Assembly (NCBI GenBank): GCA_035084275.1
Contig: CM068769.1
Location: 744,001-808,000, forward strand
Origin: Hydrolagus colliei
Taxonomy: Eukaryota
Length of the DNA: 64,000 bases
Direction of reading: 5' to 3'
The position numbers and the translations under genes are program-made. Numbering within the stretch: position 1 is the stretch's first letter; each line of letters starts with the position of its first letter. Positions 4,931-28,777 of this stretch are shown in pieces. The notes beneath the pieces were generated by a model that was given only the letters and a program-made list of their open reading frames with translations, searched no databases and was not told the origin of the DNA.

Positions 4931-4969
4931 CGTATTTGTACGATGCCCCCATGCCATGCCTACAAGGTG
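4931..4969 (-). other. 23-RSS of V1: CACCTTG, 23 bp, ACAAATACG
   Basis: Directly follows the YYCAKLP codons. Exact 23-bp spacer, degenerate heptamer. Confidence 0.75.
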
Positions 4970-8074: not shown

Positions 8075-9232
8075 TCACACACTTTACACACGAACAATGA
8101 CCTAATGCTTTCACACAGCGCCAGCGCCTGGAGAGGCGAATCCTTCCACTCTGATCCAGATTACAATTCAAACCAAAGCCTCAACGTGAAGGCTGGCCAT
8201 GTTAATAATATCATCACAATCCATCCAGTTCTGATAGCGCCTTTTCTTTTGTGGTCCAGACATCACAAAATGCAGTGGGGTCAGTTAACTCTATGATGTG
8301 AGCGAATTGCCAGTCAATTGATGCACAGCAGTGTCTGGTGAACAATCATGGATCCAGCGTTGTCAACCAAATTGCCACATTATCGCCATTGTTTTTCTTG
8401 AAGGAATTACTTCATGTGTGTCCACCTAACGCTAGATAAACAAACTTCTGTAGGGGACGGAAACTTGCCCAACAATTTCCCCTTCTGGAAATCGAACCCA
8501 GGATACTCAATTGCGGGTCAAGTGCTTTTTTAAGCTACTACTGGATAAGAGGTTTTGCTTTGCTTGTTTCCCTCATGGGATCATCGAGCTGATTGTTTGA
8601 CTGTTAGATAATAGTTCAATGTGATGTTCACATCGTGTCTTTGTCTTCTATCCAACAGGAAAGCGCTGCTGACAACTTTGTAGAGATACAAATACCAATC
8701 CATTGGACACTATTCGTTTGCGTAGTAGTTTCTCACTGTTACCCAGGCTGTTGTGGTTGTACAGTATTGTACAGCGTTAAAGGAGCATTAGCATATTGTC
8801 GACAACAGAATCGAATACATTTGTTTTACCGAAGTGAGATCCACCAAATGGCAGCTGCTGTTTGTGAGACAAAATGAGCAATAAAAAGGGATAGATAAAT
8901 TATTTTTTGAAAGCAATAGGTTAGTCCTGCTTGAGAAATAGTGGTACATTTGTGACTGGATCAGATTATGAGCAAGAATGGTGATTGCCAGAGCATTGAA
9001 CTGTTTCTTCAAGTCGTGGATCTACCTGTCCATGTCAGAAACAAGTGTGAATATTTTTGCATATTGTCCCAGTGAACTGATATGCCAAGCGACCACCAAA
9101 GTATGTTCCTTGCTGTTAATACAGAGGCGTGTGTATTAACGAATGGCTATTTTGTTCTTCCATGGCTGAACCCAGGTGCTCTCACTTGCACAGCAACTGC
9201 TGTAACAACTGAGATTCAGGCCTCAGTCTGTG

Positions 9233-9271
9233 AGTTTGTGTATGGCAGAAACGCTGATCTGTGCCTTTGTG
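9233..9271 (-). other. 23-RSS of V3: CACAAAG, 23 bp, ACACAAACT
   Basis: Follows DSAVYYCELS. Spacer is homologous to those of V7 and V9. Confidence 0.8.
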
Positions 9272-9953
9272 GGGCTCAATTCACAATAATACACAGCAGA
9301 GTCTGGAAGTCTCACTTGGGATATAGTTAATGGCACGGTTCACTCCGCTTTATCCACCTTCGTTGAACAACGTTCTTCTGGGAATTCTGCATGACGATGG
9401 TCTTTGCTGCTGGAGTGTATCTGAACGATATATCCTGGAATTTTGTTGGGATAGAGACGATACCATATCAGGTAAGGATAGCTGTCGCTTGTCGTGAAAT
9501 TACGCTGCAGATGCACATCTTCGCCTTCGTCCATTGCCACAGTTGATTGGGGCTGTGTTACACTATCTCATCCACTCTGGAAACCAGACACACTTGAACG
9601 TTCAGCAAAATAAGAACAATAATAAAATTTGAACATGTGGATGTGGCATCTCACTTCTTCTAGACCACTCAAACTCGCGGTTCAATAAAAACACCAATGA
9701 GTGTGGTGTAAGTAAACTCGCCTCACGAATCACCTTGTTTGACCCGTGAATGGAACCCACATAATCATGCTTGTGAGGCTAATACTCTAACTTTTTACGT
9801 ACAGGACTCGACAAATCCATGAGTGATGACACGTATTGGTTACTTTGTACAGGAAAAGATGGGGCGGATAATATATCTTGTCAGCAACATTATATAATTC
9901 GTGTGTGTCTTACCTGACAAGGTAATGAAGAATGATACCATGTATATGTACAT
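9272..9953 (-). pseudogene. TRAV/DV: V3 (family B): leader 9953-9914, V exon 9576-9272
   Basis: Leader MYIYMVSFFITLS-G|gtaag. The exon is 5 nt shorter than V7/V9, has two TGA stops and Cys23 to Arg, and retains WYR and YYC. Confidence 0.9.
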
Positions 9954-10129
9954 TGCCATATGTATTTAATGCCCGGAGTGATAAGAGAGTGATGATGCTG
10001 TCGTTGGAAATGTTGGTCGGGAAGTAGTGAGACGCTGTGAGGAGGGCTGAACAGTAAATTACTTACGCAAGTTGCCATACACTGTGATGGAGCAGGTCTG
10101 CGGTTTACGTGTAACAAGGTTTTCTGTGT

Positions 10130-10180
10130 CATTAAGCGTCAGTTGCTCTGCTCTGCCATCTCGCTCCTCCATTGTTTCTC
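10130..10180 (-). promoter_or_regulatory. Family-B V promoter module, copy 1
   Basis: gcgtca...ctctgctctgccatctcgctcctccattg is conserved at ~20025-20070 and ~27721-27768, about 150-230 bp upstream of each ATG. Confidence 0.6.
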
Positions 10181-11934
10181 CTCCAACCCTGACATGTCTT
10201 TGATCAACCAGGTGTCTGACACATGCACCAACTTACACCAATAATCCTGTTACAATTCGTCCAAACACATATATAGTATTAACGCAACTGTACTACCTGC
10301 GGATTCCGATAGCTTAGTGGTATCAACGCTCACCTCACAAGGAACGTGTCTGGGTTAGATTCTTGCAGGGCGAATTCTTCGATAAGTTTCCTAACTCTAC
10401 CCACACAATTCTGTTTGCACAGCAATCAGTAGCAGTTCGATTATTTCGCGATTGATCTGGTTGTGTTTCATTGTTAATAATCATTCATAAAATACGCTAT
10501 TGAATACAACACTGTTTGTGTGACATTCCGTGCACAATTGGTTGCCTGGTTTCGCCTGCAAATCGCCGAGTCACAATATTTTACAATATAGTATGAAGCG
10601 ATTAGTGATGTCTCAAATTCAGTGGAATACGCTAAGTGTATACACAGGGCTAGATAGTGAAGTAATCTGTGATGGTTTGACGTTCCCTGGGGCAGCTGGC
10701 AATTTGGTAAAGAGGTGAAACAATCCTTTGAGTGTGAGTTAGGTGGTGGTGGGGGTTTCAAAGCCAACGGGGAGGAGCCATGTGGCGTCAGCATTTTCTC
10801 AGATGTCTCTGCCCCAGTTAGTTGAACTTTGCCTTCTTGCCCCGTTTCCGCTCCAAGCTTCTGGGTGTGGGCAATAAACGTATTTTTCTAGCATAACTCG
10901 TGCGTGCAATATAAGTTCTGTGCATTTTAGTTCGCTGAATTCAGCTTCATATATTAACATCACCAATTGCAAACGGTGGCTCTGAAGCATTGGGAAAGCC
11001 ATCCAGATGCTTGTGAGTATTCAGATCAAACTGTGTTCTGTATTTATGACCGTATTTGCTAAAGCAGCTTATTATGGAATAGCGTCTAAGTGTTTGATTT
11101 GATGTAACGTAAAGTCTACCGATGGTGTATTTTGTACCAGAGAATTCCACATCACATCATCTTGCAAACATTAATGCATAGAAGGCCATCCACCAATCGA
11201 TTATCAACCAGAATCCAACTTGCTTCTCGGCAGAGAAACCCCAATAATGCTAATCATTGCTTTTTATATAGTGCTTTTGACATTATATTAACGTCCCAAA
11301 GCGCTAATCAGTTTATACCGTTAAGTGAAATGAACACAGAAGTTACTGGGAAACGCAGTTGGTTAGGAACATCAATGGAGAAAGGAAAATGAGTCGAGCT
11401 TTTGGGTAAACGACCCTTCGGTTGAATTTTGCAGTTTTTTTTGTTTGTATACAGTAAAGTGAATTGACTGCATATTTGTGGGCAAAACCCGGCAGCTGAT
11501 TGAACACAGAAGTGTCCCTCGAAGCGTCGTGGGTTGAAAATGACCAATATATATTACTATTGTGGTTTATTTGTCGGCCGGATTATTATTGGGCAATTAG
11601 GACAAGGAAGTTTGCCCCAGGTTTCTCCCTGGTCAGCCTAGTCTCACGCTTGTAAGGTGAGTGTTCTAACCGCAGAGCTCAATGAGTAGTTGGAACTAAT
11701 CACGTCTTCCAGATGCTACTAAATCTCTGCTGATTGTACAGTGATGTGGAATGACTGTGTATGTTTCCTGCTGAATGTAGCAGCCACACTTGCACAGCAG
11801 TGTCCCACAAACAGTCATCGACTGAAGAGGAACACTTTTTAAAATCAATAATTATTCCGATGAAAGTGATCCGCCATTCGACGAAAAACTGTATTCCTAC
11901 TTGATGCTATGTAAATATGTGTATGTGTTTGTAC

Positions 11935-11942
11935 GTGTGTGT

Positions 11943-11985
<43 letters not shown>
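11935..11985. repeat. (TG)n microsatellite
   Basis: Read directly from the sequence. Confidence 0.95.
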
Positions 11986-11986
<1 letters not shown>

Positions 11987-12089
11987 AGTAATGTAGCACG
12001 TCTATTATGTCGCCATGTGTCGAATGAAACTCAGGTCGGCTTGTTTACGAGGCGAGTGATCTGAATGTTGAGCTACAGTAACGTCAGCA

Positions 12090-12128
12090 TGTTTTTGTAC
12101 AGGATCCTCTTAGACACGCAGCACTGTG
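12090..12128 (-). other. 23-RSS of V4: CACAGTG, 23 bp, ACAAAAACA
   Basis: Near-consensus RSS. Confidence 0.95.
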
Positions 12129-12585
12129 CTCTCTGCTGCACAGAAGTACGTGGCGGTATCTGTCACTCGCGCGTCTCTCATTGTCAGTGTGCTGTTCTTC
12201 TCTTTTGTATCAGCCAAAGCACTTATCCTCTCCTCCACCTTGATCTCTCTGCTTCCCTTCACCAGCAAATGGATGGAGCCGTTTTTATACTGTTTGTACC
12301 ATTGGAAGGCTTGGGTGAGCAGAGTCGTGTTGCAATCGATGGATACATTTTCGTTTTCATTCCCTCTCAGTACCTGAGGACTCTGTGACACTTCTCTTTC
12401 AGCCACGACACCTGGGGAATTGACATGGACATTCTTGGAAACAAATTCGGAAAATATCTAGAACAAAACTTGTCATTATTTTGGAGTAAAACAAGTATGT
12501 ATTTATCCAAACGTGCACTCAACTTACAGAAGAGCAAAATCATGAAATTAAAAGTAATATGTGTTGCTTGGTAACTTGGCTTCAT
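12129..12585 (-). CDS. TRAV/DV: V4 (family A), apparently functional: leader 12585-12528, V exon 12411-12129
   Basis: MKPSYQATHITFNFMILLF-C|VVAEREVSQSP...IDC...FQWYKQ...DTATYFCAAE. GT-AG phase-1 intron, open frame, Cys23, Trp41 and Cys104 all present. Confidence 0.9.
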
Positions 12586-13714
12586 TCTCAATCCTTGTCG
12601 TTTCATGTCAGACTCTCCGGGTGAAAAGCAAGGAGACACCAGCTAACTGCTGATAAACGTTCATGAATGTTTGTCGAGTGCTGCTAACTGTGTAGTATAT
12701 AACTATACTCTCGGTGACGCCACGACTGACGTCTCATTTCCTGTATGTTTGCTTGTTTGACATTCATTCCCCAATCGACTACAAGCCGCGTTCGTTCAGT
12801 CCAGAAGATAGGAAGTGACTGCACTTTTCAATATAGTCTTGCAATCGCTTTGAATCAGTTGAATTACGTAATCTGTGGCTGCATCTCATGCAGCAACAGA
12901 TTCAGCCACAAATATATACAGTCAATACACTTTACAGTGTAATCTATCAAGCGCTATGGGACGCTGATAATATGTGGAAAGCGCTATATCAAATGCAAGG
13001 ATTATTATATTATATATTATATAAGCAAACATAGCTATTACTGTTCGTAATATTAGTTTAGGATCTAATTGGAATGTATTATCGGAAGAACTGTCCATAG
13101 ATGCATTTATTTAGCGATAAAAGTTACTTCCATGCATTACTATGTCAAGTTATTGAACCATCTCATAGGTCTGCATAGATTTTACTCTCGAGGGCAGAGA
13201 CAGAATATTTGGCAAACTCAGCTTAGTTTGTGTAACACAAAGTCCCACGATCACATGTGAAGTGACCGTACAATTGTGCTGGAACAATGTCTGCCACGGC
13301 ACCAGTAGAAACTCTGTTCATCCTGGAGCAAAGCCATGAAATCATTATTGCCTCTTGTTTCAAGCCACGTGAAAATCCCTTTCATGTCTCCTTGGATTGA
13401 CAGGTTCTCCGACACTGCAGCCACCGCCAGGAAAAGCGACCCGCTAACTGGCTAACAGACAGGTCACAATGTACTGCTGTAACCTGCTGTAAACGTGTAT
13501 TTGTATGCCGAGTATGGGACCATGCATAAGGATTTGGGACTCGGACAGGGAATCCAACTCAGGTCCACTCGGTTGCAAGGTGAATACTCAATCCACTGCC
13601 CTCCTGGAATCCGCAGACTCTGCACAACATCCCCTCTGTTGTACTCGTCTAATCACGTAAAATTACTGAAAGCGCCAAGTTCGATGTGTGATAGGAACTC
13701 ATGAGTATCTAGTG

Positions 13715-13753
13715 AGTTGTTGTACGAGCACTCTGCCCTTCTGTAACAGTGTG
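13715..13753 (-). other. 23-RSS of V5: CACACTG, 23 bp, ACAACAACT
   Basis: Follows YLCAVE with an exact 23-bp spacer. Confidence 0.85.
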
Positions 13754-14670
13754 GTCTCCACGGCACAGAGATACACGGCGGTGTCACTCACAACCATCCT
13801 GAGAATCTGCAAGTTAATTAGTTTCTTCCCCTTGTTCACCTCGGCAGTGAAACGGTCAGCAATTCCAACAGCTTTATCTACCTTTCCCGAGGCATATATC
13901 CTGAGGACATACTGAAGAGCTCCATCGGGATATTGCCTGTAGCAGAAGATAGTGTCTATTTTTGAAACGTTCATTCTTATTGTCACGTTTTGTCCTTCAA
14001 GTTCTGTTATCTCAGGGGGGGTTTGGTACATGACACCACTCCCATTGGCCACTGGAAAAACAATACATTTCTAATTAAAAATATGAGTTAAAATTCTCTT
14101 TACTATGTATATTATGGAGAGCTTGTACACGTCTAAAATGTCAATATGAAACGCAAGAGTTGCTGTTATTACTGTAACTTTGCTGGGGAACGGTAAACGA
14201 TCACTAGTGTTTTGGTGCTGATAGATTTTCTGTCTGTGTTTGTAAATGTTAGAACTGCTTATAATTGCGAAGTTGTTCCATTCAACTTTTAACCTTGATT
14301 TTCTGTAGCTCGTGAAATAATTAATTAAAAGCTACTTCCAAATTAAAAATACACATGTCTTGGGGTTGTGTGTTTGCATTATCTCGTCTTGTCGCCGTCT
14401 CCAATCGCTTCAATGATGTGAAGCGAATTTAATGTATGTTCTGTTGGAGGAAACTTGGCATTCAACTGTGTGTAGCCGTATCCCAAAGTCATTCGTGGAT
14501 TGATCGATCAAACTAATATTATGTAAAAACTCTTTTTCGAAAGCGATTCATTAATTCACTAACAACAACGAAAACATTAAACCGATGTGCGCAGCATGCA
14601 TTGGTCATGTCCAAACATACTTACTGTTTAGAGTGAGAATTACTATCAGTAACTGGTAGTGGGCTGCCAT
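13754..14670 (-). CDS. TRAV/DV: V5: open-frame V with Cys23 absent and Trp41 to Cys; leader 14670-14625, V exon 14051-13754
   Basis: Leader MAAHYQLLIVILTLN with A|gtaagt and acceptor ttccag|TG. Exon reads ANGSGVMYQTP...VTIRMN...IFCYRQ...DTAVYLCAVE with no stops. Confidence 0.8.
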
Positions 14671-14869
14671 GCTGGCTGCTCAGGTGTGGACAGATAATAG
14701 AGTTTCTTCCTGTATAAATGGCTGCTTTGCTGCTTCAGTTTAATGTTGTGAGGCAGCAGTGGGTCTGACGTGTGAAGTGGGCTATTGTCTACATGTGTAG
14801 GCGTTGCCCACTAACTAGTGGATCTTGAACTTGATCCACCGCAACTTGGGACTTCCTCCCGACGTGCGA

Positions 14870-15195
14870 CCTCTGCTGCACAGTGGTTAGAGCTCTCTGC
14901 TTACAAGCGTGAGACCTGTGTCTGAATCTAGGCACATCAGGGCGAAACCTTGAGCAAGTCTCCTAACTCCACACACACACACACCTAATAATATTCCGTT
15001 CAAAAGTACACAATAATAAAAATGGGTCTTTTCAAGCCACGACTGTTTGTGAGGATGATGCTTGCTGTGTACAATTGTCTACTGTGGTTTGCCCACAAAT
15101 ACACAGTCACTTGCTTGGCAGTATATTGTGTGAAACGCTTTGAGACGTCGAGAAAATGTGAAAAGCGCTAAATCAAATGTAAATATTATTAATTT
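14870..15195 (+). mobile_element. Full-length tRNA-derived DeuSINE (SacSINE1-like)
   Basis: tRNA-like head, central gactgtttgtg...gctgtgtacaattg Deu-like core, L2-type tail aaacgctttgagacgtc...gtgaaaagcgct. Many degenerate copies occur across the window. Confidence 0.75.
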
Positions 15196-16143
15196 AAAAT
15201 ATGTAATGTTTTCTTTTGCTGCTGTACCGGTGATTGGAAGCTGATGTATCTCGGAAAAGAATGGAGAGTGGACTTGCAGTTAGCATACAAACAAACTGTT
15301 ATAGATGAACGCAACTCACAAGTGAGCCGACTTGTGTTTGATTCCCAGGCAGGGCGATACTTTGGGCAAATGTTCTTAATCTACACACGCAACTGCGTGT
15401 CTCTGACAATGAGTCGGATCGTGTAAATTAGTATATTGGTGGAACGCGTTGATGTCGTCTTCAACCCTTCAAAGTTAATTATTAATAATAATAATAATGA
15501 TTTTGTATTTCCTTCCCTGTCTGTTTTGGGGAACATGTTGCGTCCGCGGTGTTTCCCGCACAAAATATACAGTTACTAATTAATGCAGCAGATCGTGTGT
15601 TGTACTATCAATTGTCTGGGTGATGCGATAATACACTGTATCGAAATCACAAATTATAATTTTTTATAACTCACAAAAGAGTGTAATCTGTAAGCACTTT
15701 GAGATGTGTGGAAGATTTGAAACTGTATTCCCCTTTGTTGGAAATACATCTAAGCAAATAAGCTGTGAACTATGATTTCTAACGTGAGAAAAATAGGCCA
15801 GTATTAAAAGTGTTCCCAAATGAAACCAATAAAGAAAAACAGATTGCTGTTATCGAAATATAACACCTTGATCAAACCAATAAGATCCACGGAAGGGCGG
15901 ATGCTTGTTTGTGAGAAGTACAACAAAACATATGGATACATTGTTCATTAGTCAACCGAAGCCTTGCGTTAATCAGGCTTTAGACAAACATTTGTACATT
16001 TCAGCTGAGCCAGCTATAGTGTATAGCAGGGAAACAGTGTCAACTGTAACAGGAAGCACCTGCTGTGGCTGCCAAGCAAGTTGTTATAGAAAGCAACGTG
16101 GGAAGTTATGTCAGTTGCTGCTGATGTTATAGGTGTGTTTGTA

Positions 16144-16157
16144 TCGCCATCTGTTGG
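16144..16157 (-). promoter_or_regulatory. CTCF-like motif CCAACAGATGGCGA
   Basis: Lies in a block paralogous to 24960-25550, which carries the motif at 25261. Confidence 0.5.
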
Positions 16158-16914
16158 TTGATTGCAGCTAGAACACGTGTACTGCAGAGACAAATGATTG
16201 CAAATTGATTTCGACCCACCATATCTTTCCTGTTCCTATCCTATCCTTTGGATACTTACACCTTATTCCCATTTCCCTGCTCGTTTCTCATATTGCCTAT
16301 GCCTCAATGGGACATTCGACTCCAACCTCATTCACACTCTCGTATTGCGACTTGCCTCTGCTGGTACGTGGCACAGACTATTTAATTTTTTTCCTTGTAC
16401 TTCTCTTGTATTTGGTAATGTTACATTTCGTAACGTTGACATTAAGAATTTACATTGCTGAATCATAAGCTTGATATGGATATACATTTATATTACTTTT
16501 CTACAGCGACTCCCACATTGATGGCTCAAGGTGCTGTATTCCCTAGAGGAAAAGTGACAACTAATCTGGGTACTTGTTAACTATAACCGTCTCTTCTCAC
16601 TGTCCCATACAACAACAGTTATGGTGGTTGAAGGTGTGTTTGCTTAAGCGTTGATTTAGTTTGTTCTAACTGCACACCCAGAAATGTGTTCAGCTGTATT
16701 TTCGGCCGGATAAGTCGGGTTTTCTAACTACTGAGCTACAGGAGCTAATTATAATCGCATGAAAAGTGGGTTCTCACTTACAACAAGGTAATCAGAGACG
16801 TGTGGATTAAGGAAACTTGCCGAACTACAAACACTTGTAATTAGATAACGCCTTCTACGCATCTTAGAAAGATACTCCCTCAATAGGAATCGAACCCAGT
16901 TCCTACCGAGTTGA

Positions 16915-16949
16915 GTGGCGTTATGTGCCAATATGGCACATAACGCCAC
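16915..16949. repeat. Perfect 16-bp inverted repeat with a 3-nt loop
   Basis: gtggcgttatgtgcca-ata-tggcacataacgccac. Confidence 0.95.
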
Positions 16950-16952
16950 AAG

Positions 16953-16990
16953 GGTTTTTGTACGGGTGTCTCGGGGATGCCTTCGCTGTG
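16953..16990 (-). other. RSS of V6: CACAGCG, 22 bp, ACAAAAACC
   Basis: Consensus nonamer with a 22-bp spacer. Confidence 0.85.
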
Positions 16991-17285: not shown

Positions 17286-17379
17286 CTACAGGAAACAATT
17301 GTGCAATTCAGTGTTGAAACGATCAATACTAAGTTAGAAAACAAACTCTATTGTGGGCCACATTTCATAGAGTATATGT

Positions 17380-17700: not shown

Positions 17701-18843
17701 ATTACTGTATACTATGTCACACTTTCAGACGCTTTGAGAATGTCTTCACACACGGGGATATTTTGTTCTACAAGATGAATGTCTGTAAGAATTTGTCAGT
17801 CATTTGAAAATTAAATTGCACCGTCCTTCAAATAGAAACCTCTAATAATAATCATCTTTAAAACTTATATAGCGCTTTGCACGTTTTCTAGACGTCATTA
17901 AGCGCTTCACAGAATATACTCTGAAGTGAATTAACTGCAGATTTGTGGGTGAAACGTGACAGCGAATTGTGCACAGCAATGTTAAAGTAACCAGGGTTAA
18001 AGGAGACTCTGTTTAGAGATGACCCGTGGTACGAGCATTGACTTGGATGGCTGTCGGTAATGATATCTAGATTAACTAACCATGTAGTGAGAATGCGATG
18101 GCTGCGGAGAGCAAATATCCCAACTGCATTGCGTTCAGACACCACAATCAGCGTTTACGTCTCTGCTGCTCTTGACACCGTGTGACACTGAGGCCACAGA
18201 TATAGCTGAGAACCCTTTGTGATGTTGTCTCTTATCTGTGCGTCACTATCTCGTACCTCGAGCTGCTGTGGGCGTGTTGGACTGCTCCAATCAGATTCAG
18301 GCTTAAACGTGTACATTTGATCCTGAGTATACACACCCACAAATTACACAGTCAATTCATTTTACAGTATAGTCATTGAGAAATATTAATGGTAAGGCGA
18401 TTGATCAGATGGAAGGATCATTATAATAACGACTTATTTCCTCATTCAAACGCTCTCGCCTTCAGTCTTCATTCCAAACTTGAAACTTTATATGATCTTA
18501 TATTTAGTGTAATACCAATATATCCGACCCACCTTTATATCTCAACAATACATGTAAAAGTTCCATAAATACAAGCAACATTGACTCAAACCTCAGTGTT
18601 TCTTTGAATTCAGTTAGTAATTCATTATTAATACTAAACTTATTTTGAAGGAATTATATCTACTGTAGATGAATTCATTCACGAGTCACCAAAAAGGGGG
18701 TTGCTACTGACTCCTGTCTCAATAGAGGTATACATATACTAAGAAAACTTGTCCAAAGTTTCGCGCAGCACGTAGTCGAACCCAGGTACTCTCGCTTCCG
18801 AAGCGACTTGCTCTCACTTCTGAGCTAGAGGACACGGCATGAT

Positions 18844-18882
18844 AGTTTTTGTAGGGCGGTAACGCTGTTCTGTGTCTCTATG
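18844..18882 (-). other. 23-RSS of V7 with a defective heptamer: CATAGAG, 23 bp, ACAAAAACT
   Basis: The essential CAC is changed to CAT. Confidence 0.85.
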
Positions 18883-19842
18883 GAGCTCAGTGCACAGTAA
18901 TACACCGCCGAGTCTGTGACTCTCACTTGGGATATATTTAACGGGATGGTTCTCGCCGCTTTATCCACTGTTGTTGAGAAACGCTCTTTCGTAAAGTCTG
19001 CGTATTTGTGCTTGTTCCTGGTTGATGTGCTGAGGGTGTATTCTGGGGGTTTGTAGGGGTATTGTCGATACCAAAACAAATATGGATCGTCGCTGATTGT
19101 CACTGTTTAATTGCACTGCAGATACACATTTTCCCCTTCATTCACTGTCACAGTCGCTGGGAGCTGTGTCGCCGAGTCTCCTCCACAATGCCCTGGGAAA
19201 CACAAACACATCAGCGTTTAATGCAATAATAACGTAAACATACTTGTGTTTGATACAGCATCGTATAGAGTGATCGTGCCATCTCCAAGCGTTTGTTTCA
19301 CTGACTAGATATAGACTCCATTTTGTGGGTGAAAGCGGCAGGCAGTTGAGTGCATCTTTCCAGCACAAACGGTCATGGAATAATAATGATAATCCTTGCA
19401 TTTAGTATAGCGCTTTTCACTTATTGGAGTCGTCTCAAAGCGTTTCCCAGTGTATACTGTGAAGTTTAATGACTATATTTTCTTCAGCAGCTGCATTTAT
19501 CAAGGGATCAATAGCGTAGTAAAGTGATCTGCCCATCGACTAATAGATCGAGTCCCTAATCACTGCTCGGTAAGCAGATATATATGTGGGTCTGTGGAAA
19601 ATGTACATTTGTAATTTCGTCCACTCCCACCGGGAATCGAACTCAGATCCTTCAGCATGCGAGGCGAGTGTTCTAACCACTAGCTGTGGGAAACCACTTA
19701 TCCACAAGTGGTATAGTATGTTGCTTATTCCATGCAATAAAACTTTGACTTTGAAGAACATGTAAAGGAATTGCATCCATATGGAGTAGTTGTTTGGCTT
19801 ACCTGCGAAGGTAATGATGGCGGCTGCCACATATATGTACAT
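18883..19842 (-). pseudogene. TRAV/DV: V7 (family B): leader 19842-19803, V exon 19192-18883
   Basis: Leader MYIYVAAAIITFA-G. The exon is intact except for TAA at 19109-19107 (C-N-stop, Tyr in V9). Confidence 0.9.
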
Positions 19843-20499
19843 TGTCATCTGTGTTAATGGCACCCTGTGTTGTGGAAGCGCTGGTGGTTTAGTGGGAGAA
19901 TGTTGGCTGGGAAACTTTATGATACCATGAGGAGGACTGAACAGGCAATGACATAAACAGGTTGCCATACACTGTGAGTGAGCTGGTCTGTGGTTTATGT
20001 ACAACCTTTGGTTCTCTGTCACTGGGCGTCATCTTCTCTGCTCTGCCATCTCGCTCCTCCATTGGTTCTCTTCTAACACTGACATGCCTTTTATCAAATG
20101 GATGGCAGACACCTGCAGCAAGATAGATCGATAGATGCATTACATGTCGTCCAAACACATACATGAGTTCCACACATCTGTACAATCTGTGGACTCATGT
20201 AGTTTAATGGTATCAACACTCGCCTTACAAGCACTTTGCATGCGTTTGATGCCTGCCAGAGCGACACGTTGGTCAAGTTTACTTACTCCACACACCGACC
20301 GTGGTTTACCGAGAGTAAGTAGGATTATGGTTGATAATCGCGTAAAGAGCAGCTTTCCAGGGAAACAATCTCTCCCAGCATAGGGAACTCGATCCGTGTC
20401 TGTTTATAGGACAATGCTGTGCCGAACTGAATGCCTCGTTTCGCCAGCAAAACGAAAAGTAAGAACATTTTACGTTGTACACTGTGAAGTGATTTATAT

Positions 20500-20570
20500 C
20501 TATCTATCTATATATCTATATATATATATATACATCTATATATAATCTATATATATATATAAACTATATG
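20500..20570. repeat. (TA)n/(TATC)n microsatellite
   Basis: Read directly from the sequence. Confidence 0.85.
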
Positions 20571-20982
20571 TATATTACAAAATAGGTAGGAGGAGGTGCT
20601 CAGAGGAACTCCCACAGTGTGTGTGTATGGGGTTAGATAATTCCTTTATTTGTGTTGATCCCGGTCCTCACATCAAAACACTCAAGAATCTCGCACCATC
20701 CTACATTCGTGACTTCCTATCCCTCCCATCTCTTTACCAACATGCCCGCACCCTTCGTTCGGCTGGACCTGACCTGCTCTACGTCCCCCGATCGACCCTC
20801 CCAACCAATCGCGGGCGAACCTTCAACCACTCTGCCCCCAACATCTGGAAATCCATCCCGAATTCATTCCGCCACAGTTTGTACTGAGAAGTGAATTGAC
20901 TGTATGCGCTACTGTATAAACGTGGCAAGCCACTTCCTCTATTTTGCAACCCTAGTACTCTAACCATTGGACTGCAGTCACC

Positions 20983-23793
20983 TGGGCAGACACATAGCAG
21001 ATGAAGTTTAATGCAGAGAAGTGTGAGGTGATGCATTTTGGGAGAACAAATGAAGGGAGGCAATATAGGCTAGATAGTACAATTTTAAATGATGTGAAGG
21101 AACAGAGAGACCTGGGGATTTGTGTTAGTGACTCGTTGAAGGTGGCAGGACAGGGAGGCAAGGCTGTTAAGAAGGCATATGGGATCATAGAATCATAGAA
21201 TCATAGAATCATAGAATTTTACGGCACAAAAGGAGGCCATTCGGCCCATCTAGTCTGTGCCGGCTCTTTGAAAAGAGCGATTCAATCCCACTGCCCTGCC
21301 CGCTCCCCATAGCCTAATAGACCCGTTCTCCCTAAATAAAGATCTAATTCCCTTTTAAAAGTTGTTATCGAATCAGCCTCCACCAACTTTTCAGGAAATG
21401 CATTCCAGATTCGAACAACTCGCTGAGTGAAAAAATTTCTCCTCAGCTCCCCTCTACTGCGCCTTGAAACTATTTTAAATCTGTGACCACGAGTCACAGA
21501 TTCACCCACGAGTGGAAATAGTTTTTCTCTATTTGCCCTGTCGAAACCCCTCATGATCTTATAAACCTCTATTAGGTCTCCCCTCAATCTTCTCTGCTCC
21601 AGAGAGAATAACCCTAGCCTATCTAGCCTCTCCTCATAGCTGAAGTCCCTCAATCCTGGCACCATCCTAGTAAATCTTCTTTGTACCCTTTCCAATGACT
21701 TCACATCCTTTCTGTCGTGTGGTGACCAGAATTGAACACAGTATTCCAGCTGAGGCCTCACCAAAGTCCTATAGAGGTTAGACAGCACTTCCTGACTTTT
21801 GTACTCTATACCCCTATTTATAAAGCCTAGTATCCCATATGCCTTCTTAACAGCCTTGTCTACCTGTCCTTACACCTTCAACGAGTCACTAACACAAATC
21901 CCCATGTCTCTCTGTTCCTTTACACCATTTAAAATTGTACTATCTAGCCTATATTGCCTCCCTTCATTTCTTCTCCCAAAATGCATCACCTCACACTTCT
22001 CTGCATTAAACTTCATCTGCCATGTGTCTGCCCACTTTACCAATTTGTCTATATCCTCTTGCAGATGGCTACTATCCTCCTCACTGTTTACTATTCTCCC
22101 TAACTTAGTGTCATCTGCAAACTTGGAAACTGTACTCCGTACACCCAAGTCCGGATCATTGATGTAGATTACAAACAGCAATGGTCCCAAAACCGATCCC
22201 TGTGGCACACCACTGCTCACTTCCCTCCAGTCTGAAAAATAGCCGCTCACTACAACTCTCTGCTTTCTGTCTCGCAGCCAGTTGTGGATCCACGCTGCCA
22301 TTGTCCCTTTTACGCCATGGGCCTTTAATTTCATAATAAGTCTCTCATGTGGCACTTTGTCAAATGCCTTTTGAAAGTCCATGTAAACTACATCAACTGC
22401 GCTACCATTATCCACCCATTCCGTTACCTCATCAAAAAATTCTATCAGATTTGTAAGGCAAGATTTGCCTTTAACAAATCCATGTTGACTGTCCTTTATT
22501 AGCCTATATCTTTCTAAGTGAAGATCTACCTTGTCCCTGATTATGGACTCTAGAAGTTTGCCCACTACCGACGTTAGACTGACTGGTCTGTAGTTACCAG
22601 GCTTGTCCTTCTGCCCCTTTTTATACAAGGGAGTAACATTAGCTATCCTCCAGTCCTCTGGCACGACCCCTGTGTCCACGGAAGATTGAAAGATCGTGGC
22701 CAGAGTCCCTGCTATTTGCTCCCGTGCCTCACTTAGTAACATAGGGTGCATCGCATCCGGACCAGGTGACTTATCCACCTTGAGCGACGTCAACCTTTTT
22801 AGCACATCCTCTCTGGTTATAATTATTCTATCCATTTCTCCTACCCTCTCCTCTCATACCATGGCATTGGCTGTATCCTTTTCTTTTGTGAAGACAGAGG
22901 CGAAGTACTCATTCAGTACATCAGCCATGCCCTCTGCCTCCACAATGAGATTTCCTCCTAGGTCCCTAATTGGCCCCACCCTCTCCTTGACCAACCTTTT
23001 ACTCTTAATATGTTGGTAAAAAACCTTAGGGTTCCCCTTAATCTTACTCGCTAATTGTTTTTCATGCAGTCTCTTTGCCCCTCTAACTTCCTTTTTTAGT
23101 TCTATCCTACACTTCCTATATTCTGCTTTGTTCCCCTCTGAATTTTGAGCCTGACACTTATCATAAGCCTCGGATACTATGCTTTATAAATAGGTGTATA
23201 GAGTACAAAAGTCAGGAAGTGCTGACTAACCTCTATAAGACTTTGGTGAGGCCTCAGCTGAAATACTGTGTTCAATTCTGGTCACCACACTACAGAAAGG
23301 ATGTGAAGGCATTGGAAAGGGTACAACGAAGAAGTACTAGGATGGTGCCAGGATTGAGGGACTTCAGCTATGAGGAGAGGCTAGATAGGCTAGGGTTGTT
23401 CTCTCTGGAGCAGAGAAGATTGAGGGGAGACCTAATAGAGGTTTATAAGATCATGAGGGGTTACGACAGGGCAAATAGAGAAAAACTATTTCCACTCGTG
23501 GGCGAATCTGTGACTCGTGGTCACAGATTTAAAATAGTTTCAAGGCGAAGTGGAGGGGAGCTGAGGAGAAATCGTTTCACTCAGCGAGTTGTTCGAATCT
23601 GGAATGCATTGCCTGAAAAGGTGGTGGAGGCTGATTCGATAACAAGTTTTAAAAGGGAATTACATCTTTATTTAGGGAGAACAGGTCTATTAGGCTATGG
23701 GGAGCGGGCAGGGCAGTGGGATTGAATCGCTCTTTTCAAAGAGCCTGCACAGACTAGATGGGCCGAATGGCCTCCTTATGTGCCGTAAAATTC
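20983..23793 (+). mobile_element. Outer 5'-truncated CR1 (20983-21185 plus 23172-23793), interrupted by a second CR1
   Basis: The WQMKFN...KKAYG segment resumes in register at 23172. ggat is duplicated at both junctions. Confidence 0.9.
21186..23171 (-). mobile_element. Inner antisense CR1 with RT domain and (ATTCTATG)n tail
   Basis: ORFs 21870-22835 and 21282-21788 carry CR1 RT motifs. Tail at 21186-21216. Confidence 0.95.
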
Positions 23794-23837
23794 CTGTACA
23801 AAAACCTGTACAAAATTCCTGTACAAAAACCTTAGCA

Positions 23838-23876
23838 TGTTTTTGTACAGGTCCTTCGTAAACACACAGCACTGTG
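23838..23876 (-). other. 23-RSS of V8: CACAGTG, 23 bp, ACAAAAACA
   Basis: Near-consensus RSS. Confidence 0.95.
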
Positions 23877-24320
23877 CTCTCCGCACAGAAGTAAGTGGCG
23901 GAGTCAGACACTCGCACGTCTTGGATCGATAACGTGCTGTTTTTTCCAACAGTCAAAGCATTTATCCTCTCCTGCTGCTTCATCTTTCTCGATCCCAACA
24001 CCAAGTAAGTGATGGAGCCGTTTCCATGCTGTTTGTACCATTGAAACCCTGGGCTAGACACTGTGGTGCTGCATTCCATAATTACATTCCGATTTTCATT
24101 CTCTGTCAGAGCTTGAGGTCTCTGTGACACTTCACTTTCAGCCAAGACACCTGGGGACATAGAATATTCTTGGATAGTATTTCATAAAATGTCTGCAATA
24201 AAATTTATAATTATGTACCAGGAAAACCAGGATGCGTGTGTCCAATCTGATACTCTACTTACACAAGATTGTTGCAATTAAATAAAAAATTATATATGGT
24301 GCATTAAAATCCTGCTTCAT
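23877..24320 (-). CDS. TRAV/DV: V8 (family A), apparently functional: leader 24320-24263, V exon 24150-23877
   Basis: MKQDFNAPYIIFYLIATIL-C|VLAESEVSQRP...MEC...FQWYKQ...DSATYFCAE. Open frame with canonical splice sites. Confidence 0.9.
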
Positions 24321-25260
24321 TCTCAAGTCTTTTCTATTCGCGTCAAAATGTCTTTTTGATGTACAGTGGGAAATCAGCTACAGGCTGATAAATGTTTGCA
24401 AATTTTTGTGGAACGCAGTTAGCCATGCAGATTATAAGTAGATTCTCAGTGACACCTTCACACACTTCTCACTTCCTGTGTGTTTGCTTCTGCAGAATTC
24501 ATTCGCCAATTGGCTAGCCACTTGCTGCTGGTTAGCGGAGGTTTGCATGTGTGTGAAGTTAGCAAACGTGACTAATGTTTCTCCCACCCTAATTGGTTCC
24601 CAATCAGGCGAGATTTTGGACAAATATATTTACTCCATACACACACACCTTATTTAAGTTTAGAATAAGGAGGAAACCGCAGCTTAGTCCATTGGTGGTT
24701 CACTTTGCTGGGGATAATATTCCCCATCTCCAAAATGTTCTACATCAAAGGCAAGCAACACTAAAGTAATCATTAATATTGATAGTATAATTACTACCAT
24801 TATTATTAATATCGCTGTCCAGTCATCTATGTAATTATTCGGACGCCTTGAAGCATGTAAACAATATAATTCTTCTGCACCTAAGTTTAATTAATTGTTG
24901 TCAGTTTTGTCGTGTTCCCAATCTACACTGAAACAATCTACCTTACAGTAGTTACCAAAATCTAATGCAATTGTTAACAAAGTGAGATCCGCTAGAATGC
25001 GGATGCTTATGTTGGAGAAAGACAATAACATGAATATATGACATCCCCATTACCTTTTCGAGCAACCTAAGCCTTGCGATTGTCATGGTTACGATTTAGA
25101 CAAACCTTTGAACATTTCAGCAGAAGCAGCAATAATACGCAGGATTTAACCAATGTGGACTGTAATAGGAAGCACCTGTTATAGCTGTCAAGGTAGATTG
25201 ACACAGAATAGAACGTGGCAAGCTGTGTCAATTGCAGATGGTGTTATATGTGTGTTTTGT

Positions 25261-25274
25261 CTGCCATCTGCTGG
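25261..25274 (-). promoter_or_regulatory. CTCF-like motif CCAGCAGATGGCAG
   Basis: Strong match to the CTCF core consensus. Confidence 0.6.
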
Positions 25275-25664
25275 TGAACTGTAGCTACTGCACGAGCATA
25301 ATTTAAAAGCAAGAGTTTTTTTTTGGGCCCTACATAAAGTTCCTGGTCCTATTGTCTCCAATGGAAATTGACAGCTTAGTTCCATTTACTTGCTTTTTCC
25401 TCGTATTGTCTGTGCTTTAATGGGACACTCGAATTCATTCTCATTCACAGTCTCTTACTATGACATATCCCTGATAATTGTTTCTCCACTTTAATTCTAT
25501 TCCTTGCTCTGATCCTGTAAACGTTGATTATATTCTGCTTCACCTTGAGCTGGCATTCACCGTTTACATGACAGCAGCACAATAGTTACATGTGTGTGGC
25601 ACTATTCATTTCGCGATGATGTCACAATGCAGTGTATTTACTACTACATCAACAAAAGAATCAC

Positions 25665-26170
25665 ATTTGAGACGTCCTCCCGATGTGACAGGCGCTATGT
25701 AAGTACAATTTTGTTGCTGTTGTTCACGTCGGATGGACGTCCGAAGCCGCTGACCAGTCAGCTCGAGAACTGAGCAATGGAGAGTGCAGCGTCTTGGGGA
25801 GGGTTGTGAGAGAGGTGACACTGGAGGGCGAGAGTTAGCAGCGAATGGACAGAGCGAGTAGGGCAGGAGAAGGCACGGTCGAAGAGTAGCGTCTTGAGAC
25901 CGACATTGAAGGAGGCTATGGAGGTAGGGAGCTAGTCAGTCGAAGGGACTGTGGGAAGGAGATCCAGAGAGCAGCGAATGAAAATCCGTCCATCGATAAT
26001 AGGGCGGGTCAGGCGGGGGACAAGGAGCAGATCAGATCCCACTGAACGGAGGGGGAACGGAGGTTAATAGGAGGACAGCAGATCGGCGAGTTGGTGGTGG
26101 GTAGGGGTGGCTAGGGGTTGGATCGTGAGGCTGGCAAGGCCGTGAATGGCCTTAAAGGTGTGGAGGAGGA
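25665..26170 (-). mobile_element. Degraded L2 3' fragments
   Basis: L2-type tail and 3' region similar to 29950-30400. Confidence 0.5.
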
Positions 26171-26690
26171 TTTTGAATTCGAAAACTTCATGCTAATTGA
26201 CAAACAATCTGCATTTTTATTTTTGTGACATAAATAATAACCTTTGTCCTCAAATCCTATTGCCTCGTGGACCAACACAATCATGTCTTCAGTGACTGTT
26301 CTTTTTCGAACCATTGATTGAACCTTTTGTATCTGCACGTCCAGATCTGGTGTCACCTCTAAGCCACAGATGTCAAGCAAAGCATTGTTCATCGAACAGC
26401 CCAACAAACCAGGACCTTTGAAGTTATGTCAGTGACAATAATATGATTATGCTTTATACACAAATTAATGCTAGCGTTTGACTACGCACCATATCACATA
26501 TTTTACAGTAATGTTTACCAATGGAAAAGGAATGTACAAGTCAACTAACAAACAGGTTTGAACTTAATACTGGGTAAACGGTGCAGATTAAGAAAACTTC
26601 AACAAAGATTCGTTCTGCATGGAATTGAACCCAGGTTCCTCGCTGGCGATATGAGTGCTCTAAAAACTGAGCTATATGATTACACTTGGC

Positions 26691-26729
26691 AGTTTTTGTA
26701 AGTCGGAAGCGCTGATCTGTGTCTCTGTG
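26691..26729 (-). other. 23-RSS of V9: CACAGAG, 23 bp, ACAAAAACT
   Basis: Follows YYCAMS. Confidence 0.9.
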
Positions 26730-27574
26730 GGGCTCATTGCACAGTAATACACCGCCGAGTCATTAACTCTCACTTCAGTTATATTTATCGGTACAGTTCT
26801 TCCCACTTCATCCAGCATCGTTGAGAATCGTTTGTTTGTAAAGTCGGCATATTGTGGTCTATTGCTAGTGGACGTCGAAAGGATATATTCTGGGGCTGTG
26901 TTTGGATAATGACGGTACCAGAACAGATAAAGAAAGCTTGTGCCTGTAGCTGTGTAATTACACCTCAGATACACATCCTCCCCTTCCTTCACTGTCACGG
27001 TAGATTGGAGCTGCGTCACAGAGTCTCCTCCACAATGTCCTGGAAATCAGACACACGTCAGCGTTCAGCAGAATAACAGCAATAACAAGAATAATGTCGG
27101 CATATGACAAAACTACATCTTGCGTCTTCATGTTAATTGAACGTTAACTACTGATTGTAGTTTAACGTATACTGTCGGTTTACTTTACGGTCGAAACGTA
27201 GTAGACATTTGTACACAAAAGTGTTCCACAAACAGTCGTGGATTGAGTAACTGTTTTAACATTATCAGTTTCACATATTGACAGATAATTACCCCCCAAT
27301 AAAGCAATCGGCGAACGGACCATATTCGAAATTACTTCCCAGGAATCACAGCAATGCATGATGAGTGACAAAATTTGCCTAATGTTTCGCGCTGTCCCGG
27401 CCGTGGAAGGATCCCAGATACTCTCGATTGTGACAGCTCTGTAAAGCTTGTTGTGTATTCATTATGTTAAGCAATAAACACTGGGCTGGATAATAAGTGC
27501 AGTTGGCTGACTATACAATGAGTGTATGGCTTACCTGACAAGGCAATGATGGCTGCTGCCACGTATATATACAT
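26730..27574 (-). CDS. TRAV/DV: V9 (family B), apparently functional: leader 27574-27535, V exon 27039-26730
   Basis: MYIYVAAAIIALS-G|HCGGDSVTQLQS...YLRCNY...LFWYRH...DSAVYYCAMS. Open frame with all core residues. Confidence 0.92.
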
Positions 27575-27854
27575 TGCCGTGTATATGTAAAGGGCGCTGA
27601 TAGTTTAGTTGGAGAATGTAGGCCGGGAAGCGGTAATATACCGTGAGGAGAGCTGAACACTAAATGAAAAAGAGGGAGCAGGTCTGAGGTTTATGTACAA
27701 ACCTTGTGTCTCTGTCAATGTGCGTCATATTCTCTGCTCTGCCATCTCGCTCCTCCATTGGTTCTCTGCCATCACTGACATGTCTTTGATCCACCGGGTG
27801 TATGACACGTAGCAACATGGTTATTATTCAACCAGTGAGTACCAGTTACGTTGA

Positions 27855-28165
27855 CTCCATGCTTCAACTCGGTGTTCAGAGCACTAGCTTTTCAAGTGTG
27901 TGTTCGAATCCACGCAGATCAGGGCGAAAGCTTGGACAAGTTTCATTACACCACACACACGCCTAGTACTAATCCGTGCAACAAAACCCACCACAATAAT
28001 AGAATTGGTGATTTCAATCCACGATTGTTTGTGGGTCTGGCAGCCGCATTTCGCCCGCAAATATACAGTCAGTTCACTTCACAGTGTACTCTGTGAAGCA
28101 CTTTAAGACTTCGATAAGATGTGAAAAGCGTCTGTATCAAGTGCAATAATTCTTCTTATTATTAT
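27855..28165 (+). mobile_element. Full-length DeuSINE
   Basis: Head with gttcgaatcc B-box, Deu-like core and L2-type tail. Confidence 0.75.
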
Positions 28166-28738
28166 TAATTAATGTTTCCTTTCCAGCGACATCATTATCT
28201 TGTTAAATAAGTGACTCGAAACACGTCTGTCTGTGGGACAATGCTGTTGTGTACGATTGGTTGACAATCGAGTGATAATGTTTCTTGAATGGATTACCAT
28301 CCTACAAAAGGCGACATGCTAATTGACTATTAAATGGGTCCCTATTCACACTTCGGCAAACAGACAACAATACTAATAATCTATGCGTTCGATATAGTGC
28401 CTTACCACGTCATCGAGACGTCGAGGAGCGCTTCCCTGGTTGTAATGTGCTTTGCGTTTTACTTTATATGTTATCGGATAAATGCGGCACATACCTGCGC
28501 ACAACAGTCTCTCACAAAAAGTCGTTGATTGAAGTGATCATTTTAATTTGGAATTATGACACGCGGAAAAGCCATCGACTATTAGAATAATAAACTGATT
28601 CCTATTCAATCCTATGTACTCAGAAGCGTGTGGTGCTAGAAAACAATGACCGAGTTTTGTGCCTGCTGGGATACGAACCAGCAAACTTATCGTTTGTGAA
28701 ACGAGTGCTTTAATCATTGAGGTACAGCAACCTCAGCA

Positions 28739-28777
28739 TGATTTTGTACAGGCTCCTCTCGGACACCCAGCACTGTG
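28739..28777 (-). other. 23-RSS of V10: CACAGTG, 23 bp, ACAAAATCA
   Basis: Follows YFCAAG. Confidence 0.9.

What the first reader, a model, noticed from the sequence alone, without database searches (positions are those of the whole stretch)
9160..28740. A co-oriented tRNA-derived SINE head sits directly behind the RSS of most V segments
Seen: a Pol III-type SINE head on the V strand starts about 12-20 bp beyond the nonamer for V3 (A-box 9213-9203, B-box 9173-9164), V4 (from 12078), V7 (from 18830; GGGTTCGAC 18783-18775), V9 (from ~26677; GGGTTCAATTCC 26632-26621) and V10 (from 28727; B-box 28681-28668). V6 has a GGGTTCGATTCC B-box at 16897-16886. V8's head survives but was displaced to ~20980 by the CR1 insertion. 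This spans three unrelated V families. Known: B-boxes bind TFIIIC and can act as chromatin boundaries, and CTCF sites just 3' of mouse proximal VH RSSs control V usage. Inference: a SINE-derived RSS-proximal element may have been co-opted to set RSS accessibility, or RSS-proximal DNA is a preferred SINE target. Caveat: cassette duplication reduces this to about three independent events, and SINEs are dense here.
Basis: partly seen in the sequence, partly recalled or inferred. Interest (0 to 1): 0.72.

Follow-up and report, generated by a model that had tools for sequence, protein, structure and literature searches.

The report
SINE copies abutting V-gene recombination signals
In this chimaera T-cell-receptor V cluster, old copies of the genome's commonest SINE sit in the V orientation a few bases behind the recombination signal in three ancient V families, far more often than chance allows, but nothing shows the SINE promoter boxes are being preserved for a function.

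Summary
All ten V segments lie on the minus strand, and nine keep a 22/23-bp-spacer RSS. Six of these (V3, V4, V6, V7, V9, V10) have a co-oriented copy of one old tRNA-headed SINE family. Its conserved head begins 9-11 nt after the nonamer where it can be aligned; in V6 the start is placed from the B-box spacing. The B-box GGTTC lies 56-61 nt after the nonamer in five of the six; V4's is broken by an indel. V8's head remnant was moved 2.85 kb by a CR1-containing insert.

A triplicated Vb-Vc cassette reduces these copies to three lineages: Vb, Vc and V6. These families look older than the split of cartilaginous and bony vertebrates. Vb is closer to a rat V, and Vc to a salmon V, than to each other. 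The three insertions are therefore independent. By permutation, three of five RSS lineages hit gives P of about 1e-6.

The RSS-adjacent copies are no better conserved than the other copies, in overall identity or in the A and B boxes. V8 keeps an open frame and a consensus RSS without the adjacency. Co-option is therefore unsupported.

My best reading is an integration bias of the CR1-type machinery for the RSS flank, followed by cassette duplication. The mechanism is not shown: no target-site duplications were found, and bare nonamer-like motifs elsewhere carry no SINE. Other first-stage notes report the same pattern across this locus.

The parts
9233..9271 (-). V3 23-RSS (heptamer CACAAAG, nonamer ACACAAACT at 9241-9233). 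V3 has an in-frame stop and is a pseudogene.
9066..9221 (-). SINE copy behind V3 (Vc lineage). Model positions 1-~170; degenerate B box GGTTCAGCC starting at 9172.
   Evidence: nhmmer
12090..12128 (-). V4 23-RSS (CACAGTG / ACAAAAACA)
11696..12080 (-). SINE copy behind V4 (Vb lineage). It carries a (CA)n expansion, and its B box is broken by an indel.
13150..13608 (-). Co-oriented SINE copy 106 nt beyond the V5 nonamer (13723-13715). Not RSS-adjacent.
16953..16990 (-). V6 RSS with a 22-nt spacer (CACAGCG / ACAAAAACC)
16745..16952 (-). SINE copy behind V6. Perfect B box at 16896-16886, core at about 16824-16753, and a short (ATT)-like tail. The head region holds a 13-nt-arm palindrome at 16949-16915.
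18844..18882 (-). V7 23-RSS (mutated heptamer CATAGAG, nonamer ACAAAAACT). V7 has an in-frame stop.
18651..18832 (-). SINE copy behind V7 (Vc lineage). B box GGTTCGACTAC at 18782-18772.
23838..23876 (-). V8 23-RSS (CACAGTG / ACAAAAACA)
20986..23828 (.). Insert of about 2.85 kb, starting 10 nt after the V8 nonamer. A CR1 3' end on the plus strand abuts the RSS side through inverted copies of the nonamer region. A second, opposite CR1 3' end with (ATTCTATG)4 lies near 21214-21180. Short AGGTK repeats flank the insert.
20940..20984 (-). Displaced remnant of the V8 SINE head (A-box part only, no B box). It is followed by the SINE 3' half to about 20873.
26691..26729 (-). V9 23-RSS (CACAGAG / ACAAAAACT)
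26377..26679 (-). SINE copy behind V9 (Vc lineage). B box GGTTCAATTCC at 26631-26621.
28739..28777 (-). V10 23-RSS (CACAGTG / ACAAAATCA)
28369..28729 (-). Full-length SINE copy behind V10 (Vb lineage). B box GGTTCGTATCC at 28679-28669. The head scores 25.2 bits on the Rfam tRNA model (gathering score 29).
4931..4939 (-). V1 nonamer ACAAATACG. No SINE head follows it, so it serves as a negative case.

Best explanation
The elements are ordinary, old copies (about 30% diverged) of the genome's dominant tRNA-derived SINE, which is mobilised by a CR1-type LINE. The family is probably the one named SINEX-1_CM / SINE2-1_CM in elephant shark.

The link with the RSS is real and non-random. The same SINE family inserted in three V families (Vb, Vc, V6), each apparently older than the split of cartilaginous and bony vertebrates. 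Each insertion is independent, is in the V orientation, and has its 5' end within about 0-11 nt of the nonamer. A later triplication of the Vb-Vc cassette multiplied these three insertions to six or seven of the nine RSSs.

I take the cause to be an integration-site bias of the retrotransposition machinery for the DNA just beyond the RSS. I do not think selection for the SINE's Pol III boxes explains it.

Shown here: the family identity, positions, orientation, enrichment, cassette paralogy, antiquity of the V families, and the lack of extra conservation.

Inferred: that the bias arises at integration, and what directs it. Candidates are RSS DNA structure, an RSS-bound factor, or chromatin in germ cells.
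For: - One family with 31-46 hits in the window. The full copies behind V4, V7, V9 and V10 run from model position 1-3 to 174; the V3 copy ends near 164.
- The family is extremely high-copy in public DNA runs of this organism and two others. The loose-end consensus in those runs equals my 3' end.
- Cassette homology is 70-78% and runs through the V exon, the RSS and the SINE head.
- Permutation: three of five independent RSS lineages hit within 12-20 nt, P about 1e-6 to 4e-6.
- Independence of the three lineages. V10 is 39% identical to a rat V cluster but 24% to V9. V9 is 46% identical to a salmon V. Between families, third-codon identity is 0.25-0.49 and the RSS spacers are unrelated, while SINE pairs average 0.53.
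- The nonamer-to-GGTTC distance is 56-61 nt in all three lineages.
- There is no excess conservation of the adjacent copies.
- An unrelated CR1 insertion sits 10 nt after the V8 nonamer, at the RSS/SINE junction, with copies of the nonamer region templated into its tail.
- The two lineages without an adjacent head (V1, V5) are also the two whose nonamers lack the A5 run.
- Population-genetic argument (inference): fixing a SINE at one precise spot behind each of many V genes by selection would need an implausibly large benefit per V.
Against: - No target-site duplications were detectable for any adjacent copy, so the nick site is unknown.
- None of 10 non-RSS CAAAAAC motifs in the window is followed by a SINE head. 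A bare nonamer motif is therefore not a sufficient target.
- Most non-RSS SINE copies have no nonamer-like 5' flank.
- Only three positive and two negative lineages are available in this window.
- B and A boxes show a weak, non-significant trend towards better preservation in the adjacent copies. In the Vc trio the head aligns better (63-71%) than the SINE body (40-61%).
- The true SINE 5' end is uncertain by about 8 nt.
Confidence: 0.5

Rival explanations
1. Co-option. RSS-adjacent SINE heads were retained by selection because a TFIIIC-bound B box, or Pol III promoter activity, sets nucleosome positions or chromatin boundaries and so tunes RSS accessibility. This would work like the CTCF sites behind mouse proximal VH RSSs.
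For: - Enrichment is RSS-specific rather than motif-specific: 3 of 3 A5-nonamer RSS lineages against 0 of 10 other CAAAAAC motifs.
- Spacing from nonamer to B box is uniform at 56-61 nt.
- V6 and V9 have perfect or near-perfect B boxes.
- There is a weak trend to better-kept boxes (B 8.8 against 7.5 of 11).
- The head aligns better than the SINE body in the Vc trio.
Against: - Box conservation does not differ significantly from other copies (p=0.12 and 0.20), and overall divergence is the same.
- The V3 and V4 B boxes are degenerate.
- V8 lost the B box and the adjacency but keeps an open frame and a consensus RSS.
- The pseudogenes V3 and V7 carry the element just as the open V segments do.
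- Selection strong enough to fix a precise insertion behind many individual V genes is implausible (inference).
- No paper linking TFIIIC or SINEs to RSS function was found.
Confidence: 0.17
2. Hitch-hiking only. One or very few chance insertions behind an ancestral V were copied along with V genes as they duplicated, across families as well as within them. This is the reading an earlier follow-up gave for another window of this locus.
For: - Within families this is clearly what happened (cassette homology).
- SINE-SINE pairwise identities cannot separate paralogous pairs from independent pairs: 0.57 against 0.53-0.545.
- Offsets are nearly the same in the three lineages.
Against: - Vb, Vc and V6 are each closer to V genes of bony vertebrates than to one another. 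A shared insertion would therefore have to predate that split.
- The copies are nevertheless only about 30% diverged from the family consensus, like every other copy.
- RSS spacers and third-codon positions are saturated between families.
- Even a single event at this position has P of about 0.02-0.04.
Confidence: 0.1
3. Deletional compaction. SINEs inserted at varied distances downstream of the RSS, and later deletions removed the neutral DNA between the constrained RSS and the SINE until the two abutted.
For: - The V cluster is a dense pile of SINEs, many abutting each other head to tail.
- V5 shows a co-oriented copy at +106.
Against: - Deletions that stop exactly at the SINE 5' end in three lineages would need the head to be constrained, which the data do not show.
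- Unconstrained deletion should leave 5'-truncated copies in either orientation.
Confidence: 0.08
4. Chance in a SINE-rich region, plus pattern-seeking by the reader.
For: SINE coverage is 27.8% in the V cluster, and the heads were noted after the fact.
Against: Permutations that use the observed head density and strand bias give P of about 1e-6 for three lineages. Other first-stage notes report the same pattern over more than 1.3 Mb of the locus; these notes are unchecked leads.
Confidence: 0.03

Closest known systems
Major tRNA-derived SINE of the elephant shark (SINEX-1_CM / SINE2-1_CM, partner LINE CR1-2_CM; PMC1845163, PMC3747384)
   Same: It has a tRNA-like head with A and B boxes. It is by far the most abundant repeat here and in related DNA runs. 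The host is a chimaera, and a CR1-type LINE is present in the same window.
   Different: Identity with the Repbase entries could not be checked, because no repeat library is available here. The partner LINE's 3' end was not found in the window. The CR1 3' end at V8 ends in (ATTCTATG)n, whereas the SINE ends in (ATT)n.
CORE-SINEs / MIR (tRNA head, conserved core, LINE-derived tail)
   Same: The architecture is the same, and the core motif GGGCAAGTTTCCTTAC resembles the MIR core (my recollection of the MIR consensus, not a database test).
   Different: No formal alignment to a CORE consensus was possible. The 3' half is family-specific.
CTCF-binding elements just 3' of proximal mouse VH RSSs
   Same: Both are a recurrent non-coding element a short, fixed distance behind V RSSs.
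   Different: Those elements are conserved, bound by CTCF and shown to control V usage. Here there is no evidence of conservation or binding, and the element is a decaying transposon.
Position-specific retroelement integration (Ty3 at Pol III start sites, Dictyostelium TRE elements near tRNA genes, site-specific LINEs such as R2)
   Same: Orientation and distance to a defined genomic feature are reproducible across independent insertions.
   Different: In those systems the targeting factor or sequence is known. Here the feature is an RSS, the motif alone is not sufficient, and no target-site duplications could be recovered.

Membership tests
tRNA-derived SINE (SINE2 type) | Internal Pol III A box and B box at tRNA-like spacing in the 5' head | tested here: met
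   The consensus head is TCCTGTAGCTCAGTGGTTAGAGC...GGTTCGATTCC.
tRNA-derived SINE (SINE2 type) | Head recognisable as tRNA-like by a tRNA model | tested here: inconclusive
   On the Rfam tRNA model the V10 head scores 25.2 bits and another copy 22.5, both below the gathering score of 29. ARAGORN finds copies (tRNA-Ala-like) only at relaxed thresholds. This is as expected for decayed heads.
tRNA-derived SINE (SINE2 type) | Dispersed multi-copy family with a common consensus, on both strands | tested here: met
   There are 46 nhmmer hits on both strands. Word depth over the SINE parts is very high in DNA runs of three organisms.
tRNA-derived SINE (SINE2 type) | 3' end shared with a partner LINE | not testable with these tools
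   No LINE with this 3' end lies in the window. PMC1845163 reports 41 of 46 shared bases for the elephant shark SINE/LINE pair.
tRNA-derived SINE (SINE2 type) | Target-site duplications flanking copies | tested here: inconclusive
   No flank match beat shuffles (P 0.37-0.98). The copies are about 30% diverged and often nested.
TFIIIC-type boundary element (ETC / tDNA-like) | B box maintained by purifying selection | tested here: not met
   Adjacent against other copies: B box 8.8 against 7.5 of 11 (p=0.12). The V3, V4 and V8 boxes are degenerate or lost. The test is underpowered.
TFIIIC-type boundary element (ETC / tDNA-like) | Occupancy by TFIIIC or Pol III in lymphocyte precursors | not testable with these tools
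   Needs CUT&RUN or ChIP in thymus.
Site-directed non-LTR integration | Same position and orientation relative to the target in independent insertions | tested here: met
   In three ancient V lineages the gap is 9-11 nt (placed for V6 from the B-box spacing). All copies are co-oriented, and the nonamer-to-GGTTC distance is 56-61 nt.
Site-directed non-LTR integration | Target motif sufficient outside its native context | tested here: not met
   None of 10 non-RSS CAAAAAC motifs is followed by a SINE head.

The most novel reading that the evidence does not exclude
The flank just beyond V-gene RSS nonamers is a directed integration site for CR1-type retrotransposition in chimaera germ cells. Direction would come from RSS DNA structure, an RSS-bound protein (cartilaginous fishes are thought to have RAG activity in germ cells), or chromatin reading by the LINE proteins. 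SINE heads would therefore accumulate behind RSSs throughout the antigen-receptor loci. A secondary possibility is that the resulting tDNA-like heads now influence RSS accessibility.
Probability: 0.35. Interest if true: 0.8.

Novelty: new variant of a known kind. Interest (0 to 1): 0.55.

Why it matters
The elements themselves are ordinary. The interesting part is their placement.

Independent, co-oriented insertions at nearly the same offset behind RSSs of ancient V families point to one of two things. Either RSS flanks are a retrotransposon target in a basal jawed vertebrate, or a recurrent transposon-derived element sits next to the sites where RAG acts.

Either would bear on how antigen-receptor loci and mobile elements interact. 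That question is of long standing, because the RSS/RAG system is itself of transposon origin. Both readings are directly testable with a locus-wide count, with orthologous loci, and with chromatin assays.

If the pattern is only an integration bias with no consequence, it remains a useful marker for dating V-gene duplications.

Tried and rejected
1. Target-site duplication search. I compared the 22-nt 5' flank of each adjacent copy with the 150-520 nt downstream. Nothing beat shuffles. By-eye candidates behind V7 and V9 were therefore dropped.

2. V5 as a fourth lineage. The 106 nt between the V5 nonamer and its SINE looked by eye like a 5'-truncated SINE 3' end. Neither nhmmer --max nor a shuffled local alignment supports this.

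3. A decayed V with RSS upstream of the SINE at 8542. Translation shows no V relic.

4. CTGTACAA motifs upstream of some non-RSS heads looked like Vb RSS relics. They are part of the SINE's own 3' half.

5. SINE phylogeny by pairwise identity to separate shared from independent insertions. There is no resolution: true paralogues average 0.57 against 0.53 for random pairs. The shuffled control for profile-alignment bias gave too few aligned columns to use.

6. Orthologous loci. The Callorhinchus V proteins found come from UniRef only. The one I looked up (P0002) has no contig on record.

7. Laying contigs of three organisms at 80% likeness. The result was swamped by repeat copies and gave no orthology.

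8. The Rfam gathering-threshold scan and default ARAGORN find nothing.

No N run was touched.
Full report
**What is in the window**

Ten V segments lie on the minus strand, with their exon 3' ends near 4969, 7102, 9271, 12128, 13753, 16990, 18885, 23876, 26729 and 28783.
- Nine keep an RSS with a 22/23-nt spacer; nonamer coordinates are. V2 is a partial V without an RSS.
- V3 and V7 carry in-frame stops and weakened heptamers.
- By protein identity, V3/V7/V9 form one family (Vc, 52-65%) and V4/V8/V10 another (Vb, 60-65%). V1, V5 and V6 are singletons at 16-38% to everything else.
- Earlier notes of this scan place the window in a chimaera TCR locus next to a NAR-TCR cassette.
- The best database relatives of V9 and V10 are Callorhinchus milii Ig-like domains at 58-70%. 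This fits a chimaera, and suggests the species may not be C. milii, though a missing annotation would give the same result.

**The elements are one real SINE family**

I started from the DNA behind V9 and iterated nhmmer on the window.
- A 176-nt profile gives 31 hits and a 298-nt profile gives 46, on both strands.
- The consensus has a tRNA-like head (TCCTGTAGCTCAGTGGTTAGAGCACTCGCC...CCTGGGTTCGATTCC).
- It has a MIR-like core (GGGCAAGTTTCCTTAC).
- It has a 3' end ...GTGAAAAGCGCTATATCAAATGCAAGGATTATTATT.
- The longest copies run about 345 nt (V10's is 361), because some carry an extra internal segment.
- The V10 head scores 25.2 bits on the Rfam tRNA model, just under the gathering score. ARAGORN calls two other copies tRNA-Ala-like at relaxed thresholds.
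- Public DNA runs of this organism and two others show enormous word depth over the SINE parts. Their loose-end consensus equals my 3' end.
- The elephant shark's most abundant SINE is tRNA-derived, covers 7-8% of the genome and shares its tail with a CR1-like LINE (PMC1845163). It is listed as SINEX-1_CM/SINE2-1_CM with partner CR1-2_CM (PMC3747384). This is probably the same family, but I could not test that.
- The family covers 27.8% of bases 1-30000 and 2.8% of the rest of the window.

**The observation**

Co-oriented copies that start with the head lie directly behind these V segments:
- V3: 9221
- V4: 12080
- V7: 18832
- V9: 26679
- V10: 28729

The conserved TCCTGTAGCTC start lies 9-11 nt after the nonamer.

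V6 has a perfect B box at 16896-16886 and a strong SINE core (z=19). Its first ~45 nt hold a 13-nt-arm palindrome and cannot be aligned to the head.

GGTTC lies 56-61 nt from the nonamer in V3, V6, V7, V9 and V10, which cover all three lineages. V4's box is broken by an indel.

Several independent copies share a further 5' leader (yTGyGGAT). If this belongs to the SINE, its 5' end comes to 0-6 nt from the nonamer.

At V8 an insert of about 2.85 kb begins 10 nt after the nonamer.
- A CR1 3' end on the opposite strand is joined to the RSS side through inverted copies of the nonamer region.
- A second, opposite CR1 3' end with (ATTCTATG)4 lies near 21200.
- Beyond the insert, the first ~45 nt of the SINE head survive at 20984-20940. 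They match the V10 head (z=5.1) but have no B box.

V5 has a co-oriented copy at +106. V1 has none.

**Paralogy**

The three Vb-Vc cassettes align at 70-78% through the V exon, the RSS and the first ~100 nt of the SINE. They also share an intergenic block. The copies therefore collapse to three lineages: Vb, Vc and V6.

**Are the three independent?**

- V10 is 39% identical to a V cluster that includes rat proteins, but only 24% to V9.
- V9 is 46% identical to a Chinook salmon V.
- V6's best match is that same salmon V, at 35%.
- The three families therefore look as if they separated before cartilaginous and bony vertebrates did.
- Between families, third-codon identity is 0.25-0.49 and the 23-nt spacers are unrelated.
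- The SINE copies are each 65-77% identical to the family consensus, like all other copies (62-75%). SINE pairs average 0.53.
- Within cassettes the V exons diverge no faster than their flanks, so this comparison is fair.

A single insertion inherited by all three families is thus very unlikely. Pairwise SINE identities alone cannot settle the point.

**Is it more than chance?**

I placed the observed number of independent heads at random in the 26-kb V cluster, with the observed strand bias.
- At least three of five RSS lineages with a co-oriented head within 12-20 nt: P about 1e-6 to 4e-6.
- At least two lineages: P about 1.5e-4 to 4.6e-4.
- At least one lineage: P about 0.02-0.04.

Other first-stage notes describe the same pattern in at least seven other windows across more than 1.3 Mb of this locus. 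Those notes are unchecked leads. One follow-up elsewhere read the pattern as a single old insertion copied with the V genes. That holds within families here but not between them.

**Selection or integration bias?**

Tests for constraint are negative.
- Overall divergence is equal.
- B box: 8.8 against 7.5 of 11 (p=0.12). A box: 8.2 against 6.5 (p=0.20).
- The V3 and V4 boxes are degenerate.
- V8 lost the box and the adjacency while keeping an open frame and a perfect RSS.
- In the Vc trio the head (63-71%) is kept about as well as the V exon (70-74%) and better than the SINE body (40-61%). That comparison depends on the alignment.

Three features are what a mechanistic bias would give: strict co-orientation, a uniform offset, and an unrelated CR1 inserted at the same spot behind V8. 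Selection would need a large benefit per V gene to fix a precise insertion repeatedly (inference).

Evidence against a simple sequence target:
- None of 10 non-RSS CAAAAAC motifs carries a SINE head.
- Most non-RSS copies have no nonamer-like 5' flank.
- No target-site duplications could be recovered.
- The two lineages without an adjacent head are the two whose nonamers lack the A5 run. This is suggestive, but it rests on three lineages against two.

**Verdict**

The elements are ordinary decaying SINE copies.

The best-supported reading is repeated integration just beyond the RSS, followed by cassette duplication. What directs the integration is unknown. The co-option reading has no support from sequence conservation, but it cannot be excluded without binding and usage data.

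I found no paper that links SINEs or TFIIIC to RSSs.

Noticed in passing
window 23793-23837 (and 20986-23828 as a whole): A CR1 3' end on the plus strand is joined to the V8 RSS flank through two or three inverted copies of CCTGTACAAAA(A), the end of the RSS spacer plus the nonamer. The whole 2.85-kb insert holds a second, opposite CR1 3' end with (ATTCTATG)4 and is flanked by AGGTK. Another first-stage note covers this (s1-139129).
   Followed up: partly
window 16915-16949: A near-perfect palindrome (GGCGTTATGTGCC ATAT TGGCACATAACGCC) occupies the A-box part of the SINE head behind V6. It may be a templated or snap-back repair product.
   Followed up: no
window 27150-27433, 19382-19681, 9668-9806: Each Vc segment (V9, V7, V3) also has a co-oriented SINE copy ending within about 90-200 nt upstream of the V exon, where the leader and promoter should be. 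Only 27433 and 9806 scored as likely paralogues.
   Followed up: no
window 11940-12005: A long (CA)n microsatellite has expanded inside the SINE behind V4, at the family's own short CACACA stretch.
   Followed up: no
window 30001-64000: SINE coverage drops tenfold (2.8% against 27.8%) outside the V cluster. The region 37-42 kb is full of CA-rich simple repeats that give spurious miRNA-model hits.
   Followed up: no
window 9271-9567 and 18885-19181: V3 and V7 are pseudogenes, with in-frame stops and heptamers CACAAAG and CATAGAG. They retain the nonamer and the SINE like their intact paralogue V9.
   Followed up: partly
window 28307-28364 and 11180-11236: In both the V10 and V4 cassettes the full SINE is followed at once by a 5'-truncated co-oriented copy starting near model position 100. 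This tail-to-body pile-up is older than the cassette duplication.
   Followed up: no
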